64,000 bases of DNA from Paragordius varius (lineage: Eukaryota; Animalia; Nematomorpha). The notes below the pieces were generated by a model, which had not been told where the DNA came from, did not search any database, and saw only the letters and a list, made by a program, of their open reading frames with translations. Both the position numbers and the translations under genes were made by a program. Shown here one piece after another: positions 55,836 through 64,000 of the stretch. Every line of letters starts with the position of its first letter. Position 1 is the stretch's first letter. Location of the stretch: assembly GCA_964247055.1 (NCBI GenBank), contig OZ176053.1:62001-126000 (forward strand). The letters run 5' to 3'.

Positions 55836-57159
55836 TTAATATTATGTCAATATTCTTAAAAAAAAATTATATTTAACATATACTTTAAGACGAACAGATG
55901 TTATAGTCAATTCTGAGAGGCTGGAAATCATCAGCATCATACAATTATGATAAGAAAATATTTATGAAATATATTATGACATTTTTTTACCGTTTCTCAT
56001 GCCTCAAAATAGTGTGAAGTACGCTTAAACAAAATTAAAAATTAAATTTTTGAAAAAGTATGCATTTTTTAAAAACAATTTAATTGATAACAAAATATCT
56101 TGGCATTATTGCCATTTATGAGAAAACTAGCCGAATATTAACGTGAAAACTTAAAACTGGAGCCTACTAAAAATTATTTTTTAAAATATTATTAGTCTTT
56201 GATATATTAGCTAAATTTTTAAAAATACATCGTTTAGCTTTAACCAATAAATCTAATTAATGTGAGCCTTTTCTCCTATTTTTGGATGTGGAGCACTTAC
56301 TACAAAAGTATAAATAACTTTGTTAAATTACTTATAGGGGCCAACACCAAATGTACCATGATATTCCTGATACATTATCCTATCAAATATATATAATCAT
56401 CCTCATAATATTTTTTGTGTACACTGTGTTATACTAAATATAAATTTTTCGGTTAAAGCTAAATGCTTGATACCGAGATCATCAAAAAAACTGCAAAAAA
56501 TAATAATACTCTTTTCATAAATAATTTTAATTATATTTTATCCAAAATACTTTTTGGGCGTTATGTTAAATAGGCTGCCAAAAACTATAAAGATAGTACA
56601 TGCATATATATTACTAAAAAATGTAACCATCTATAACACATAAAATTGATGGTTACTTTAAAGTAATATTTTGAATTATTCAAACAACAATTTCTATAAA
56701 GTGTCCTTATATCTATTGAATATAATATCTAGGATGTTTAATATGTTAGGGAGAAGAATGGTACGATTAGACTGATTTATCTATAAAACCATTTAATTTT
56801 TTTCAACTATGTGTTAATAATGTGATGCGTAATAGTATGGCATAAAGCCCTAAAATTTAAATTGTCAATTTATATTAAATTTTTTATTTGTCCATTAATA
56901 ATGTTATTAACCTCATTTATGACATTTAATTGGTTTTAGCTACAACATACATTTATGATTGTGGTAATTGACTGGTTACGACCATAAATGCCTTGCACAT
57001 CAAAATCAAGTAGACACAGAAATTATTTTTAGACAGGTTATTATACGCTAAGTTACCTACACCCTTCATAAAAATGTATATAAATTGCCCAAAATTAAAT
57101 TTTTTTCTTTATAATTTTATGTTATACTTATTTTATGAAATTAATTAAATAAAAAATAT

Positions 57160-60100
57160 TTATTTATATTTGCAATGGAAGCTAATAAGTGTAAAACTTA
57201 TATGGCAAAAATAAAGTACAAACAAAAATGTTAAATGGTGTTTGGCCGTAAATAACCAAGTTTTGAATCCGGCCTTTGCTAAGAAATCTTTTCCACTCGT
57301 GGCTAAACAATAGTGTTGATTTTTCTTCCACGATTCTTGTTCGAGCGATGGGAAACTACTTTCACCCATGGAATTGGTAAATGCCGAAAAGATTATACTA
57401 ACATTTGATGAGTTTTTAACAATAGGTGCTATTTTAGAATCAGATTTTTCATCTTTCCAAGAAGCGTTGGCAAATTTGAAATACTCTCCAGTGGGCTTTT
57501 CGGATATTTTCTTATCCAAAACTAAACTTTCATAATATGGATGGTTGTTATTGTTGGAACCGATATTTTCAAGGTTATTTTTATGGTGATAAATCATGCA
57601 GGAGGATTCACACGTTAGATTTAGCGTGGAGAATTCATTTAGTATTATGGAATGACTGGCATATCGATAAAAACTCAGATAACTCAAATAATTGACAAAC
57701 AGCGGTAGGTTATTATATAATCTAAAAATTGCAAATATACATTAAAAGTGAAATTATACGGACAAAACATAAAAATAAAAAGGCAAATATTTTTTTCTAA
57801 TATAAAACCACACTTTTTTTTATCTTGATTTATACATTGTTTTAAACGGCAAAGTATTAAATACAGATGTGTTAACACAATCAATTATGTTTACGATTAA
57901 AATTAAATGATTATAATAGTATAAATTAAGATATGAAAAAGTATGGTGGCCTTTTAGAAAAAAATATTTGCCTATATATTTACTTTTTATCCGTATAATA
58001 TCTTTTTTTACTGTAAAATATATAAATTCGAAATATATAAAATTACAATCTTAAAAAATACCTTAAGATACCGGAAGAGGAAACTAACCCAATCAGGGTT
58101 AAAATAAACGAAAACTCAAATATTTTCGTAAAATTTTTCACGTGATTCATAAGACACAAAGTTTGACATTCAACGCAACCATATAAAGCCCACATAACCA
58201 ATGAAAATGCAATGTATTTATCAATGTTTGCTTCGAAACCCGAAACCCTATTATTAATTTGAGATATTTAGCTCTACAAATATTTTTTATCAATTTTTGT
58301 AGCATAAAATGTTTATTAACTAACCAATATATCAGCGATGATCCCAAAAAACTGGATAAGAAGTTAAGGGGTACATTTTTAATAATGACCCATGTCAAAT
58401 ATAAACTTCCACCATATAGTTTTTGTTGTGCGAATTCCTCTTGAAACACGACGAAAGAGTCCATTTCTGAAAAAACACATATATGTTAAAAAAATTGGTA
58501 GAAATTGGTATGTACAATTAGAGTAAAAATTAAATTTATACAGGCAAATCGTAAAAAGTAATAGAACTTTTTTTTTAAAAAAACCACAATTCTATAAACT
58601 TTGTTTTTCCTATACATAGACTATATATTTGATACCAATTCACTACTCTTTTTCTTACTTTATAATTTTGATTTAAAAAAATCAAGTTCAAAAAAGAATG
58701 AACTGTTTTATTTATAAAAAAACGTACGTCTTTTCCTTTTTACGTTTAGATTGTATAATTATAATTTTTACTGGCTATCTTGAATGAACTTTTTTACCAA
58801 TTTTTACCAATTTTAACCCTAAAAAAATACCGACCGTAATATATAGTGTGGATGACGGATATGATTGATTGGGTTAGCATGGCATATAGGACGAGTCCTA
58901 ATCTCATCAACATACCAGTTTGATTATCTGTTCTCCAATAGTTATTATAATTTAAATTACCAGCATGGCTTTCAGAATTTATCATTAAATTATTGTGATT
59001 ATAATTATATAACATTGAACGTATCAGCATAACTGTAAACATGAGACATGGAAACAGAAATATGCGAAATGCTAACCCCATATAATTCCGCAGTAGATTC
59101 AGGTAATATCGGCTAGTTTTTTAAAGCAAAATAAATGTTATAGGAAGTTTTATTAAAAATTTTGTAAAAAATAAATGTTTACTTGATTAAGATGAGAAAG
59201 GTGGTAAAACAGCTTGGCTTATCCAGAGAATTGATTAGATACTGCATGTTATCTAAAATGATGGTTGGAATAAAAATTAGCTGAAAATAAGACTTTTAAA
59301 TAAAATTATTCTTCTAGAATTTTCAAATTTTTGACATAAAAATACAAAAATGTATCTTTAAGGTTGAATCTACAGATAATAATTTGAAATTTTATAACAA
59401 TAAAAAAATTAATTGATTTACTCGATTTACGTGATGAAATAATCGTGTTCTTATATCCATCCACTCTTTTTTCGGTCGCCAAGCTTTCGTTGACCACGTT
59501 AAAACGTTGCTGGTGATGATGCGTTTTATAGGATTCAATCAGTTTTTCCAAAAGTGCCGAAGTCTCCAAATATTTTTCGGTACTTTGATAATTAACGGTA
59601 CAAAGAGTAACTAATAAAACATAAAAGTGAAGTAATTGACGACTTGAAAAATAAAAAAAATAAAAAGGATTTACGAAAATAATTGATGGGATTTTCATAC
59701 TCCGGACAATCTATACCCAAATTTTCACTAAAGTAAGGAATGACATTGTTTATCGGACCTGTTAAGTGAGATACTTCAATTTCATTTTGTAATATAATAA
59801 TCATATTTTTTTCATAAAAATTGAGATCAAATCATAACATTTACTAATTTAACGTTAGTATATTCAAGTTTATTCAGCCTAATAATATGAAAAAATTTGT
59901 ACTTTTCCTAATTTATAGGAAATATCGCAAAAAACATTATATAATTGGGCCATCCTGCTGCTTTTCTTGCAAACAAACTTTAAAAATCACCATAATAAAC
60001 GAGTTGTCCTCGATTTATGTAGGCCACTTTATCTATGAGGATGTTGAGATCCGACCTGGTCCTCGGTAATGATACAATGGTTATCTTATTTTTTAATTTG

Positions 60101-62249
60101 GTGTAATTCGCTAAACGCTTTAACACATTATTGACGTTGAATGAGCTAAGAAGGTGCTTGAACAAGTTATCCAGCAATACAATCTCTAATTGAAACATTG
60201 AAATTAATAATAGGTATAAATGTCTTGTTGTATAAATATTTGATGGAATATTGAATAATTTTAATTTACAACTTTTGCTTTACAGTAACCATAATTTTAT
60301 TGATAAAAACGCTATTATTGCAAAATGTCATCACTTTAATTTGGGTTAAAAGGAAAATTTAAACGATAAAAAAATCTACCCAAGGTTTATAGCTATTTTT
60401 ATCAAAAAAAGTCACATAATTATATATACCATTTACAGTTCAGATTCACTCTCGAACTATTCCATTTCTCCCTAGAATAAATTAAGTGTTTTTTAAGATC
60501 AAAAATTACTTATTTTTTTATTTTTAAAATATAAAATTTTGTTTAAAATCAATATAATACTGAAAAAATAATAAACTATATCATTAAGATATATTTCATA
60601 TTAATGAAGAGTTATTTTAGCCCGAAAACTCATAATTTATTTTTAGAGTGAATTTGAATTGTTCAAGGGTAAATTCCAATTTTTCGCCGATCTGATAGCT
60701 TCTGAATGAAATGACTATCCAAATTATTAAGATATAAGCAAATATCTAAAACTATTAAAACTGAAGTTATCAAAACTACTGCTTTAAGCAGTTTAGCATA
60801 TTAACAATTAAAAAAGATTAATTTTAAAAAACTTTGTACAAATATATATTTTTTGACAAATTATTTTTGACACGTCATAAAAACATGTGTGTCCACTTTC
60901 ATTTGGCCGGTTCCTTTTTAAAGCGATCACAATCACATAAAATGAATTCTGTTGGCATATAGAGGAATTTATTAATTAAATATGTGAGATATCAAAAACC
61001 TGGATCATGGAGAAGATTGATAACGATGGTAAAAATAACGTATTCGTAAGGAGTTATGTCTGATATCGATTTTTCCACAAAAGTTGCCATATCCCACAAT
61101 TTTATTAGATCGGTCATCTAAAATAGTTGTTAGGAAAACTAAATAAATATTAAAATTTATTTTATAATTATTTATTCATATATTCTATTTAAAAGGATAT
61201 GGGATAATTATAAGGTGTGTACGATTTACAGTAAAAATTGAATACAAATTTATTAAACCTAAAAGGCAAATATTTTGATAGACAATCATTCTTTTAAAAA
61301 TTAATTTATAGAAAATAGAAAAAAATGAAAAAATGAAGGTTTAAAATTGTATGGCGTAAAAAAATTTGTCTTTACGTTTTCATATTTTGTTTGTTACTCA
61401 TTATTTTTAATCTTAGATGTAATGAAATCTCTTTTAAACCGCAACTATTGTATTTTTATCCAAAATGAAGCCATTAGACGTGAATAAAAATATTACAAGC
61501 CTTTACTTGTTCTTTAATGGTTCGATTTGTGTGATGTTTGGATAATTTAAGTTTTGCCGAAAACCAAAGTATCTCATGCAAGGAAAGATATGCGTATGGA
61601 AAAATGGTAAAGCCATTTCTGGAAATTGGGCTACTTTGAGATCGGGAATACTCAGAAGGTATATAATAATTCATTGCAGAGGCAAAAATATTGGATCCAT
61701 TGATGTATGTTCCAATGGTAGAAAATGATTTTTCCTCATACTCTATGTTGTTAAAGGTACATCGTCCCAAAATTAAGCCGCCCTCCAAACCATTAGCGTT
61801 GATTGAAGTGTGATTTGGTGTAATGGAAAGACATTTTAGCAAATAAGAATTTTCACAATCTAAGTAATATCCATATATAAGATATGAGTTATCTGAGCTC
61901 TTTAAAGTTTCGGAGAATATAAAAGCAACAAAATTTTGTTTAAATTAAAACCTGGGCCACTCAGGATGGCTGTAACGTTTCCTGGGTGAAAGTCCATATT
62001 AATGTTCCGTAGTATGTTACAGTTATTGGAACTGGTCCTATTAAACATTTATTAACAACTAATAAATGTAATTCAACAAAATATAATTAAGTTGCTTTTT
62101 AAAAGTTAAAAATAATTTTTAATAAACTAGAATGAAAAATATTATTAAATACTATTTAATATGCTAGAAAACTGTAATAATTTTCGTCTCGTTTAAAGTT
62201 AAAATAAAAAGACATTATAACTTTTAATTAACAGAAATCATAGAATATC

Positions 62250-62280
<31 letters not shown>

Positions 62281-62361
62281 TATTGGTTTAAAAAATATAG
62301 GAACTTACCTCTCAAGTGGAGATTTTTCGACAATATAACTTAAATCTTGAATTTGTAACAT
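57160..62361 (-). CDS. ABCG5-like half-transporter with a degenerate nucleotide-binding domain (about 11 exons)
   Basis: MLQIQDLSYIV (ATG 62361); ILRNINMDFHPGNVTAIL; LSLHEILWFSAKLKL; LLHDP-EIVLLD; YYGPINNVIPYFSENLGIDCPEYENPINYF; PSCFTTFLILINRYYLNLLRN; IYWVSGF..SSGILR; LSYLSFYRYASHSIILNEFSTLNLTC; CLATSGKDFL. NBD-before-TMD order is the ABCG architecture, and several blocks recall human ABCG5. All predicted introns are GT-AG with consistent phases. Confidence 0.88.
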
Positions 62362-64000
62362 ATTTTATCAAAAAATTAATAAAAACTATCTTAATTAAAT
62401 TATGCACATAATTGTTAAGGTATAAATTTTATGGTCAAAAGTTTTTATATATCCAGCAATATAAAGAAAGAGTTTATGTCATTGTTTTATATATTCATAT
62501 ATAATGTATATAAATATTACATTTTATCATGGTAAAATAGTTTGGTATAGTTATGCTATATAATATAAAATTAATTTTAACTTTAATAAATTTAATAATT
62601 AAATTATATAATTTATCACTTAAAACAAAATTTGCTTTATAAAGCGAACAAAAATATTATGGAAATATAAGAGTTCCATTAAGTGGTAAATAAGAAAATA
62701 AGGATTTTTAAACAGGTAAAAAACCATTTTGTTTATTCTTGCCTAATATAATTTAAATACTATATACATTCTCCTATGCGCATATAATCTTATCTCTATT
62801 CGCCAATTTAAATTCCAATATATCCAATAATATGTGTCTTAAATGTCAAAATAATATATATTATATTAAGTAATTGGACTTAAAAAATTATTTTTATTAA
62901 ATTACATTACAACACATAAAATATAATTATACGAATAATTAATAAATGGTTATTTTTTGTAAAATAGTGTGATTTTAGGTGTGCATAAACAGTTATTTCC
63001 AAATATTAAATGAATATATATTGGCGGATTTATGTTTAATAGATCCATGCTATAGTAACCCAACTAAGATTGTGTTTTAATAATATAGCGCTTATTAAGT
63101 AGCACATATAACTAATCCCATTGCAAATTTTTAAGGTCATGTTAAATATATGAAATCTTTCCAACTTATTTGTTTTTAGAAACTGTCAAGCATTCAAAAA
63201 ATAAATCTATAGCAAATATTAATAGTAAAACAATATTAATTTTTTAAAAAGTGTCATTATGTAACTCTTATTATACGGTATGAGTAAGTATACATTGCTA
63301 GAAAGTTATTAAATATTGACAAATAGCACATATACAACAAAGGGCTGTATTATTGGCTTATAGTTATTTTTTTCAATATTATTATATTCTTTACTGCATA
63401 TGCCATTTAGCAATAATTGATGAAAAACTAGCAATTTATAATTACTCATACTATAATTCGGAGAGAAGGTGGTTTTCATTATTTTAATAATTTTTATCCA
63501 CTACCACGATATTAAAAAATAACTTAAAAAGTGTAAACTAAATTGAGCCGTATATATAAAATATTAAATGTTTTAATTTTTTAACAATCCGAAAAGGGTA
63601 AATTCATAAACAATTAATACTGCAGTTATGACTAATTATAATCGAGTCAATTTTTTGACACATAACTTTAAATTATTTTTTTCAGATTAACCCTTCCAAT
63701 CAAAACCTATAAATATGCATCCTAAAAATACAAGGTTTATACGTTTCCAGAAAAGGTGTTTAGTTCCATTTACTATTTATGACCATTTATAATTCGATTG
63801 CTATGGCTTCATAGTCAAATCATCATTTAATTGGCTTGTGGTTCCAGTCGCTCAGTAAAAATGCCAATTTTTCAAACTCTGATAATTTCAATTAATTAAT
63901 AATGGTTACAATTTGCAAAATAGATACCAAAGCCATATTTATATAGGCTCCTATGTTTAGCTCCTTTCCCGTTAAAATCGCATCCTTGCATAATTAATTT

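What the first reader, a model, noticed from the sequence alone, without database searches (positions are those of the whole stretch)
59985..62040. ABCG5-like transporter in which every ATPase motif is degenerate (candidate pseudo-ATPase)
Seen after splicing: the Walker A position reads SGPDCENS (no GxxGxGKS/T, no Lys); the signature position reads ITPYE (canonical LSGGE/Q); Walker B reads IVLLDN (catalytic Glu replaced by Asn); the D-loop is replaced by FKHLLSS; the H-switch reads SLPRT (canonical S(I/L)HQP). Yet the reading frame, splice phases and the whole TMD are intact, arguing against a pseudogene. Established: in ABCG5/G8 each partner is degenerate at only one composite site, leaving one active site. 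Inference: losing both Walker A and the signature would cripple both composite sites in any dimer. The protein may be a non-hydrolysing scaffold, sensor, regulator or passive lipid/sterol conduit. No partner gene is visible in the window.
Basis: partly seen in the sequence, partly recalled or inferred. Interest (0 to 1): 0.75.

Follow-up and report, generated by a model that had tools for sequence, protein, structure and literature searches.

The report
ATPase-dead ABCG5 sterol-transporter orthologue
This probable horsehair-worm gene is an intact, selectively maintained copy of the sterol transporter ABCG5 that has lost every residue needed to bind and split ATP, so it is a natural case of a membrane pump kept for something other than pumping with its own ATP site.

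Summary
On the minus strand lies a complete 12-exon gene (62361-57160, 768 aa). All introns are GT-AG and the phases are consistent. It is an ABCG5 orthologue. Its only detectable relative among 1.84 billion representative proteins is a 774-aa Gordionus (horsehair worm) protein, 40% identical with at least 7 shared intron positions. That protein matches human ABCG5 far better than ABCG2 or ABCG8, by both sequence and predicted fold. In 95 ABCG5 orthologues from Capsaspora to mammals, the Walker A Gly/Lys, Q-loop Gln, SGGE, Walker B Asp-Glu, D-loop Asp and H-loop His are 93-95/95 conserved. The window protein has lost all of them. Gordionus has lost all but Walker A and the D-loop Asp, so the decay began before the two lineages split. 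The gene does not look like a pseudogene. Against a roughly 4% divergent relative or haplotype, 10 of 15 exonic substitutions are synonymous (P about 1e-4 to 2e-3), the single exonic indel is 3 nt, and indels in introns and the 3' flank are 1-3 nt. No alternative exon restores a motif and no partner gene is nearby. Expression could not be shown, and the function is inferred.

The parts
62309..62361 (-). Exon 1: start codon and first beta-strand of the NBD (MLQIQDLSYIVEKSPLE), donor GTAAGT
Evidence: Read from sequence. It aligns with the 'LKIRNLNYVLEK' start of the Gordionus orthologue.
61952..62037 (-). Exon 2: ends inside the Walker A position (…AILSGP|)
   Evidence: tblastn with P0001. The intron sits at the same place as in Gordionus (GTQ|GSGKS).
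61507..61859 (-). Exon 3: rest of the degenerate Walker A (DCENS), Q-loop position (YINGS, Gln to Gly), a 35-aa lineage-specific insertion (aa 103-137, 61588-61692) and the E-helix (LSLHEILWF, Glu kept)
   Evidence: All non-synonymous X5 differences and the 3-nt indel lie in the insertion.
61000..61117 (-). Exon 4: signature position ITPYE (61043-61057) where ABCG5s have [IV]SGGE
   Evidence: Against the X5 contig the exon carries 1 synonymous change, while the flanking intron carries 6 substitutions plus 1- and 2-nt indels.
59991..60185 (-). Exon 5: Walker B IVLLDN (catalytic Glu to Asn), D-loop FKHLLSS, H-loop SLPRT (His to Pro), end of the NBD core
   Evidence: In the PDB the best matches are ABCG8 and ABCG5, weakly (E 0.02).
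59675..59758 (-). Exon 6: conserved post-NBD block (YFSENLGIDCPEYENPINYF)
   Evidence: (weak ABC2_membrane_7)
59431..59610 (-). Exon 7: ABCG5-type 'ETS…IESYK' helix and start of the linker
   Evidence: The alternative donor 8 nt downstream breaks the frame (model C).
59183..59252 (-). Exon 8: short linker exon (70 nt) leading into the connecting helix. This is the least certain exon.
   Evidence: Needed to keep the frame between exons 7 and 9. It aligns weakly with Gordionus 'SCAF' and has no tblastn hit of its own.
58835..59112 (-). Exon 9: connecting helix, TM1, an 18-aa longer outer loop, TM2
   Evidence: The upstream donor (GTCGGT) is preferred over the one at 58808 because Gordionus has no 9-aa insertion there.
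58325..58466 (-). Exon 10: coupling-helix region and TM3 (…SSFLGSSLIYW)
   Evidence: intron position shared
58062..58247 (-). Exon 11: TM4 and TM5
57160..57721 (-). Exon 12: re-entry helices with the ABCG5-type NEFSTLNLTC block, a long outer loop (EL3, about 110 aa, conserved Cys kept), TM6 and the stop. AATAAA overlaps the stop.
   Evidence: (only ABCG5 chains hit)

Best explanation
This is the ABCG5 orthologue of a probable horsehair worm (Nematomorpha). It is a full-length NBD-TMD half-transporter that purifying selection keeps intact, but whose nucleotide-binding domain can no longer bind or hydrolyse ATP. Shown: orthology to ABCG5, loss of every catalytic motif, integrity of the gene, and selection on the coding sequence. 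Also shown: the catalytic Glu, H-loop His, Q-loop Gln and signature glycines were already lost in the common ancestor with Gordionus, and Walker A was lost later in this lineage only. Inferred: the NBD survives as a structural module. It is as conserved against Gordionus as the TMD. It also keeps the E-helix Glu and the Arg residues equivalent to human ABCG5 E146, R389 and R419, which link NBD and TMD. On this reading the protein works as the non-catalytic half of an ABCG dimer, most likely with an ABCG8-type partner encoded elsewhere. It would contribute its membrane domain and its docking surface to sterol or lipid handling. Neither composite ATP site can use its contributions, so any energy input would have to come from elsewhere or be dispensed with. 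My odds: about 0.75 that it is a functional, ATPase-dead protein; about 0.4 that it still acts in a G5/G8-type heterodimer; about 0.2 that the whole complex is ATP-independent.
For: Gene model: 12 exons, all GT-AG, 768 aa with no stop. Exon GC is 34% against 21% in introns. Every exon but the two shortest is found by tblastn with the Gordionus protein, and at least 7 intron positions are shared. Orthology: plus a 100% supported clade with Gordionus in the ABCG5 tree. Motif loss against 95 ABCG5s. Selection: 10 synonymous against 5 non-synonymous substitutions (4 codons, all in one insertion loop). Binomial P is 1.5e-4 under a uniform spectrum and 1.7e-3 with kappa 4, and pN/pS is about 0.13. 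The only exonic indel is 3 nt, and indels in introns and the 3' flank are 1-3 nt. Identity to Gordionus is 41% in the NBD and 45% in the TMD, against 27-32% in loops and linker. The Gordionus NBD is predicted as a well-folded ABC domain, with pLDDT mostly above 90. In mammals, mutating ABCG5's Walker A or B abolishes sterol secretion, while mutating its signature does not (PMC6824678).
Against: No RNA evidence: three small candidate RNA runs of the same species label laid nothing on the gene. The whole protein is very divergent. It keeps only 41% of columns that are at least 90% conserved in ABCG5s. Motif columns (24% kept) are not significantly worse than other NBD columns (46% kept; Fisher P = 0.06). 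The selection test rests on 15 listed differences from short contigs of one run, with 14 further differences not shown. Outside the insertion loop the NBD contributes only 2 of them. The window lineage's end branch is 4.6 times that of Gordionus, which could mean ongoing relaxation. Single exons give no significant Pfam hit. No partner has been identified.
Confidence: 0.75

Rival explanations
1. The whole G5/G8-type pair of this animal has given up ATP. The partner is degenerate too, and the dimer acts as an ATP-independent sterol or lipid conduit, binding platform or uptake facilitator.
For: This subunit disables its share of both composite sites. An earlier, unchecked note of this scan reports a second ABCG half-transporter with every ATPase motif degenerate on another piece of the same genome (s1-299093). 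Another note reports a pump-dead Na,K-ATPase paralogue kept in two hairworm genera (s1-305296).
Against: I could not read the second gene, and nothing shows that it is ABCG8-like or that the two proteins pair. No ATP-independent ABCG complex is known. Gordionus still has an intact Walker A, which suggests nucleotide binding mattered at least until recently.
Confidence: 0.2
2. It is a young or decaying pseudogene. The ABCG5 function was lost with the parasitic, gut-reduced life style, and the open frame has simply not been hit yet.
For: All catalytic residues are gone. The end branch is very long. No transcript was found. Only 41% of near-invariant ABCG5 columns are kept.
Against: A 2.3-kb frame across 12 exons is intact with 11 good splice pairs. 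Differences from the X5 relative are strongly biased to synonymous sites, and the exonic indel is in frame. The catalytic Glu, His and Gln were already lost before the split from Gordionus, yet both genes remain intact and 40% identical with shared introns.
Confidence: 0.07
3. The gene model is wrong at the motifs. Real transcripts would use other exons, or an unconventional site, and the protein would still be an ATPase.
For: There is no cDNA. Exon 8 and the exon 7 donor are uncertain.
Against: No Walker A, signature, Walker B or H-loop pattern occurs in any of the six frames of the whole 64-kb window. The motif-bearing exons are collinear with the annotated Gordionus gene and split by introns at the same positions, including the one inside Walker A. 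The P-loop position carries Asp and Glu where phosphates would bind.
Confidence: 0.04

Closest known systems
Human ABCG5 (sterol half-transporter; PDB 5DO7, 7JR7, 7R87-7R8B chain A)
   Same: It has the same NBD-then-TMD half-transporter layout. ABCG5-specific blocks are kept (ETS…IE.YK helix after the NBD, NEF..L..TC before the outer loop, paired outer-loop Cys). The E-helix Glu and the Arg residues equivalent to E146, R389 and R419 are retained. The signature is the weak motif in mammalian ABCG5 too (ISTGE; PMC6824678).
   Different: Human ABCG5 supplies the Walker A, Walker B and H-loop of the only active site, and mutating them abolishes transport. Here Lys is Asn, the catalytic Glu is Asn, His is Pro and Gln is Gly, and the P-loop glycines are replaced by Ser, Asp and Glu. 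The protein is also about 115 aa longer, with an insertion after the Q-loop, a longer TM1-TM2 loop and a long EL3. No ABCG8 gene lies next to it.
Gordionus sp. m RMFG-2023 'unnamed protein product' (P0001, 774 aa, GCA_954871325.2)
   Same: It is the only detectable relative of the last exon among 1.84 billion representatives. It is 40.5% identical overall, shares at least 7 intron positions, the insertion after the Q-loop and the long EL3, and has the same loss of the catalytic Glu, H-loop His, Q-loop Gln and signature glycines (LTEYE against ITPYE).
   Different: Gordionus keeps a canonical Walker A (GTQGSGKS) and the D-loop Asp, so it may still bind nucleotide. Its gene spans 12.9 kb against 5.2 kb here. 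Its end branch in the tree is 4.6 times shorter.
Degenerate (non-catalytic) nucleotide-binding sites of asymmetric ABC transporters (ABCG8 in G5/G8, Pdr5/Cdr1, TAP1, CFTR site 1)
   Same: The same kinds of substitution are seen: Walker A Lys lost, catalytic Glu replaced by Asn or a similar residue, H-loop His lost, deviant signature. Such sites are kept by selection as structural or regulatory sites (PMC6824678 and PMC8421411, found; otherwise my own knowledge).
   Different: In all those cases the deviant motifs are arranged so that one composite site is sacrificed and the other stays fully canonical. Here a single subunit is deviant both in its Walker A, Walker B and H-loop and in its signature, so it spoils its share of both sites.

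Membership tests
ABCG subfamily half-transporter (type V ABC fold, NBD N-terminal to TMD) | One ABC-type NBD followed by a six-helix ABC-2 membrane domain in one chain | tested here: met
   The window exons are collinear over the full length with P0001. P0001 carries Pfam ABC_tran, ABC2_membrane_7 and ABC2_membrane above threshold and folds like ABCG structures.
ABCG subfamily half-transporter (type V ABC fold, NBD N-terminal to TMD) | Significant Pfam ABC_tran / ABC2_membrane hit by the window's own sequence | tested here: inconclusive
Single exons (28-186 aa) give no significant hit; the best is ABC2_membrane_7 at E 0.085.
ABCG5 orthologue group | Closer to ABCG5 than to any other ABCG | tested here: met
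   The last exon hits only ABCG5 chains in the PDB. The orthologue P0001 scores 164 bits to ABCG5 against 100 (ABCG2), 89 (ABCG8) and 81 (ABCG1). Fold-search ranks 1-7 are all ABCG5 chains. No tree with ABCG8, ABCG1 or ABCG2 outgroups was built.
ABCG5 orthologue group | ABCG5-specific conserved blocks outside the ATP site | tested here: met
   LS.xE.L, CP..NP, ETS…IE.YK, QDR.G (Arg and Gly kept), YW..G, NEF..L..C and the EL3 Cys pair are all kept.
ABCG5 orthologue group | Canonical Walker A, Walker B and H-loop, the contributions that form the active site in mammalian G5/G8 | tested here: not met
   Among 95 ABCG5s: G95, G95, G95 and K95 in Walker A; D94 and E94 in Walker B; H95 and Q95 in the H-loop. 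The window has S, D, E and N in Walker A; D and N in Walker B; P and R in the H-loop.
ABCG5 orthologue group | Obligate heterodimer with ABCG8; head-to-head gene pair in vertebrates | tested here: not met
   No ABCG-like coding sequence occurs elsewhere in the 64-kb window or within 10 kb either side of the Gordionus gene. Pairing at the protein level cannot be tested here.
Catalytically competent ABC ATPase | Walker A GxxGxGK[ST], Q-loop Gln, signature LSGGQ/E, Walker B hhhhDE, D-loop, H-loop His | tested here: not met
   All six are deviant in the window protein. No canonical copy occurs in any frame of the window.
Pseudogene | Frame disruption, lost splice sites or a neutral substitution pattern | tested here: not met
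   The 768-codon frame is intact with 11 GT-AG introns. 10 of 15 substitutions are synonymous against 21-27% expected, and the exonic indel is in frame.

The most novel reading that the evidence does not exclude
Horsehair worms have converted the whole ABCG5/ABCG8 sterol exporter into an ATP-independent device. The other all-degenerate ABCG noted elsewhere in this genome would be the ABCG8 partner. The pair would then be a selectively maintained, energy-free sterol/lipid conduit or receptor in an animal that absorbs host lipids through its body wall. That would be the first natural ABC transporter dimer with no working nucleotide site.
Probability: 0.15. Interest if true: 0.85.

Novelty: new variant of a known kind. 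Interest (0 to 1): 0.62.

Why it matters
Degenerate ATP sites are well known in ABC transporters, but always with a canonical site left to drive the cycle. A full-length ABCG5 that selection has kept after losing Walker A, the Q-loop, the signature, the Walker B Glu, the D-loop and the H-loop is a natural separation-of-function allele. It asks what an ABCG nucleotide-binding domain and membrane domain do when they cannot use ATP. The two hairworm genera give a two-step series: Gordionus may still bind nucleotide but lacks the catalytic residues, and this species has no P-loop at all. That series makes the question testable by expression, ATP-binding and sterol-transfer assays. It also adds to signs, so far only in unchecked notes of this scan, that this parasite lineage keeps several 'dead' pumps.

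Tried and rejected
- **Pfam on nine single exons:** nothing significant.
- **PDB sequence search with exons 3, 7 and 9:** no relevant hit.
- **Word-index protein search with exon 3:** no candidate. With P0001 it found only itself and an unrelated bacterial ABC protein, so no further nematomorph orthologue is in that collection.
- **Big search with the last exon:** only P0001 is a true relative. P0002 is a chimeric snail ABCG5 model and P0003 is unrelated.
- **RNA evidence:** three candidate RNA runs of the same species label gave only 33-36-nt matches to AT-rich or repeat sequence, so expression is undecided.
- **Gene model B** (exon 9 donor at 58808, better consensus): rejected, because it inserts 9 aa that Gordionus lacks.
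- **Gene model C** (exon 7 donor 8 nt downstream): rejected, because it breaks the frame.
- **Selective erosion of the ATP site beyond the general divergence:** only suggestive (24% against 46% of conserved columns kept, P = 0.06), so I do not claim it.
- **Literature search for an ABC transporter described as a pseudo-ATPase or with both sites degenerate:** no such case found. This is not proof that none exists.
Full report
**What is in the sequence**

The flagged interval lies on the minus strand of a 22-41% GC window (mostly 23-31%). Three-frame reading and inspection of the junctions give a 12-exon gene. In window coordinates the exons are:

| Exon | Coordinates | Exon | Coordinates |
|---|---|---|---|
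| 1 | 62361-62309 | 7 | 59610-59431 |
| 2 | 62037-61952 | 8 | 59252-59183 |
| 3 | 61859-61507 | 9 | 59112-58835 |
| 4 | 61117-61000 | 10 | 58466-58325 |
| 5 | 60185-59991 | 11 | 58247-58062 |
| 6 | 59758-59675 | 12 | 57721-57160 (with the stop) |

All 11 introns (64-814 nt) are GT-AG. The phases fit, and the joined frame is 768 codons without a stop. Exons have 34.4% GC and introns 20.8%. Exon 1, with the start codon, lies just upstream, and the membrane domain lies downstream.

- SGPDCENS at the Walker A position
- ITPYE at the signature position
- IVLLDN at Walker B
- FKHLLSS at the D-loop
- SLPRT at the H-loop

The weakest part of the model is the 70-nt exon 8 in the linker. The frame requires it, but it has no tblastn support of its own.

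**What it is related to**

Single exons are too short and too divergent for Pfam. In the PDB, the last exon matches only ABCG5 chains, through the NEF..LN.TC block. The Walker B/H-loop exon weakly matches ABCG8 and ABCG5.

An exhaustive HMMER search with the last exon against 1.84 billion representative proteins found one real relative, P0001. It is a 774-aa 'unnamed protein product' of the horsehair worm Gordionus sp. m RMFG-2023.

- **Genome composition.** The Gordionus locus has 26% GC, and the published Gordionus genome has 26.93% (10.1101/2023.06.26.546503), like this window. Earlier notes of this scan also call the genome horsehair-worm-like. I therefore take the organism to be a nematomorph, though this is not proven.
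- **Similarity.** P0001 finds every exon but the two shortest in the window. It is 40.5% identical overall: NBD 41%, TMD 45%, linker 32%, outer loop 27%.
- **Gene structure.** At least seven intron positions are shared, including the one that splits Walker A.
- **Family assignment.** P0001 carries ABC_tran and ABC2_membrane. It scores 164 bits to human ABCG5 against 100 for ABCG2, 89 for ABCG8 and 81 for ABCG1.
- **Fold.** Its AlphaFold model (pLDDT 79, pTM 0.77, NBD mostly above 90) has ABCG5 chains as its seven best PDB matches.
- **Tree.** In a tree of ABCG5s the window protein and P0001 form a fully supported pair on a very long stem of 4.65 changes per site. The window's own branch (1.58) is 4.6 times longer than that of Gordionus (0.34).

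**The motifs against the family**

I aligned the model and P0001 with 95 ABCG5 half-transporters from molluscs, brachiopod, annelid, nemerteans, fishes, a bird, mammals and Capsaspora.

| Motif | 95 ABCG5 orthologues | Window | Gordionus |
|---|---|---|---|
| Walker A | G-x-S-G-S-G-K-T; the three Gly and the Lys 95/95 | S-G-P-D-C-E-N-S | G-T-Q-G-S-G-K-S |
| Q-loop | conserved Gln (at least 90% of the 95) | Gly | Arg |
| Signature | [IV]SGGE; S95, G93, G95, E95 | ITPYE | LTEYE |
| Walker B | LLDEP; D94, E94 | LLDNL | LLETP |
| D-loop | Asp 95/95 | Ser | Asp |
| H-loop | IHQP; H95, Q95 | LPRT | LQRA |

Both hairworm proteins share a 30-35-aa insertion right after the Q-loop. Loss of the catalytic Glu, the His switch, the Q-loop Gln and the signature glycines therefore predates their split. 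Loss of the P-loop is specific to the window's lineage.

No canonical Walker A, signature, Walker B or H-loop occurs in any frame of the 64-kb window. No hidden exon can therefore restore them.

**Gene or pseudogene**

One DNA run under another organism label (X5) holds short contigs of this locus. Some are identical to the window and some are about 4% divergent. Of the 15 listed exonic substitutions, 10 are synonymous.

- The 5 non-synonymous substitutions affect 4 codons, all inside the insertion loop (aa 113-129).
- With 21-27% synonymous expected, P is 1.5e-4 to 1.7e-3, and pN/pS is about 0.13.
- The only exonic indel is 3 nt. Indels in introns and the 3' flank are 1-3 nt.
- In one contig, exon 4 carries one synonymous change, while the adjoining 62 nt of intron carry six substitutions and two indels.

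The selection evidence has three limits. Few sites are involved, 14 further differences were not shown, and outside the loop the NBD contributes only two substitutions. The survival of both orthologues as intact, collinear genes long after the catalytic residues were lost also argues against a pseudogene.

Expression could not be tested. Three small candidate RNA runs laid nothing meaningful on the gene.

**How it most likely works**

In mammalian G5/G8, ABCG5 gives the Walker A and B of the only active site and a naturally weak signature (ISTGE) to the inactive one. Mutating ABCG5's Walker A or B abolishes sterol secretion (PMC6824678). The window protein has lost exactly those contributions, and its signature has Pro and Tyr where the glycines must approach the nucleotide. 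Its share of both composite sites is therefore dead, whatever the partner is. That step is an inference from established ABC mechanics.

What is kept points to a structural NBD that is still coupled to the membrane domain:

- NBD conservation against Gordionus equals that of the TMD.
- The E-helix Glu (human E146) is present.
- The Arg residues equivalent to R389 (polar relay) and R419 (apex of TMH2) are present. All three are sites of sitosterolaemia mutations.

I therefore read the protein as the non-catalytic half of an ABCG dimer, most likely with an ABCG8-type partner encoded elsewhere. No ABCG-like sequence lies in the window or within 10 kb of the Gordionus gene. An unchecked note of this scan reports a second all-degenerate ABCG on another piece of this genome. 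If that gene is the partner, the complex would be ATP-independent. I could not read it.

The whole protein is very divergent: 41% of near-invariant ABCG5 columns are kept. The extra erosion of the motif columns is only suggestive (P = 0.06).

**Comparison and novelty**

The protein belongs to the ABCG5 orthologue group by descent but fails the group's catalytic features. It resembles the degenerate sites of ABCG8, Pdr5/Cdr1, TAP1 and CFTR. It differs in that one subunit is deviant on both faces. I found no paper describing such a case, and the Gordionus protein is unnamed. I rate it a new variant of a known kind.

It was built and used only inside scripts, for alignment, motif counts, the substitution test and the tree. 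The searches used single exons by reference, or P0001.

Noticed in passing
window 57744-58008 (intron 11): A palindromic, MITE-like element of about 265 nt (63-nt arms, 83% complementary). It is extremely deep in run X5 and has partial copies near 8.1k, 39.7k, 48.6k and 49.6k of the window.
   Followed up: partly
window ~60420-60690 (intron 4): A second dispersed repeat, with 81-85% identical copies near 21.3k, 33.5k, 35.0k and 50.6k. A 33-nt piece of it is the only thing the candidate RNA runs X6 and X8 matched.
   Followed up: partly
window 61588-61692 (aa 103-137): The lineage-specific insertion after the Q-loop, shared with Gordionus, is the variable spot of the gene. All non-synonymous differences from X5 and the only exonic (3-nt) indel fall in it. 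It is the low-confidence part of the Gordionus NBD model.
   Followed up: partly
window gene against L001:10001-22869: The Gordionus orthologue spans 12.9 kb against 5.2 kb here, with the same intron positions. After the split the window lineage's protein changed 4.6 times faster (end branches 1.58 and 0.34).
   Followed up: partly
window 62239-62289 (intron 1): A (TA)n microsatellite. Reads and contigs appear cut there in the laid runs.
   Followed up: no
run X5 on window 57100-62400: X5, filed under another organism label, holds both contigs identical to the window and contigs about 4% divergent at the same places. It therefore contains two haplotypes or two closely related species.
   Followed up: no
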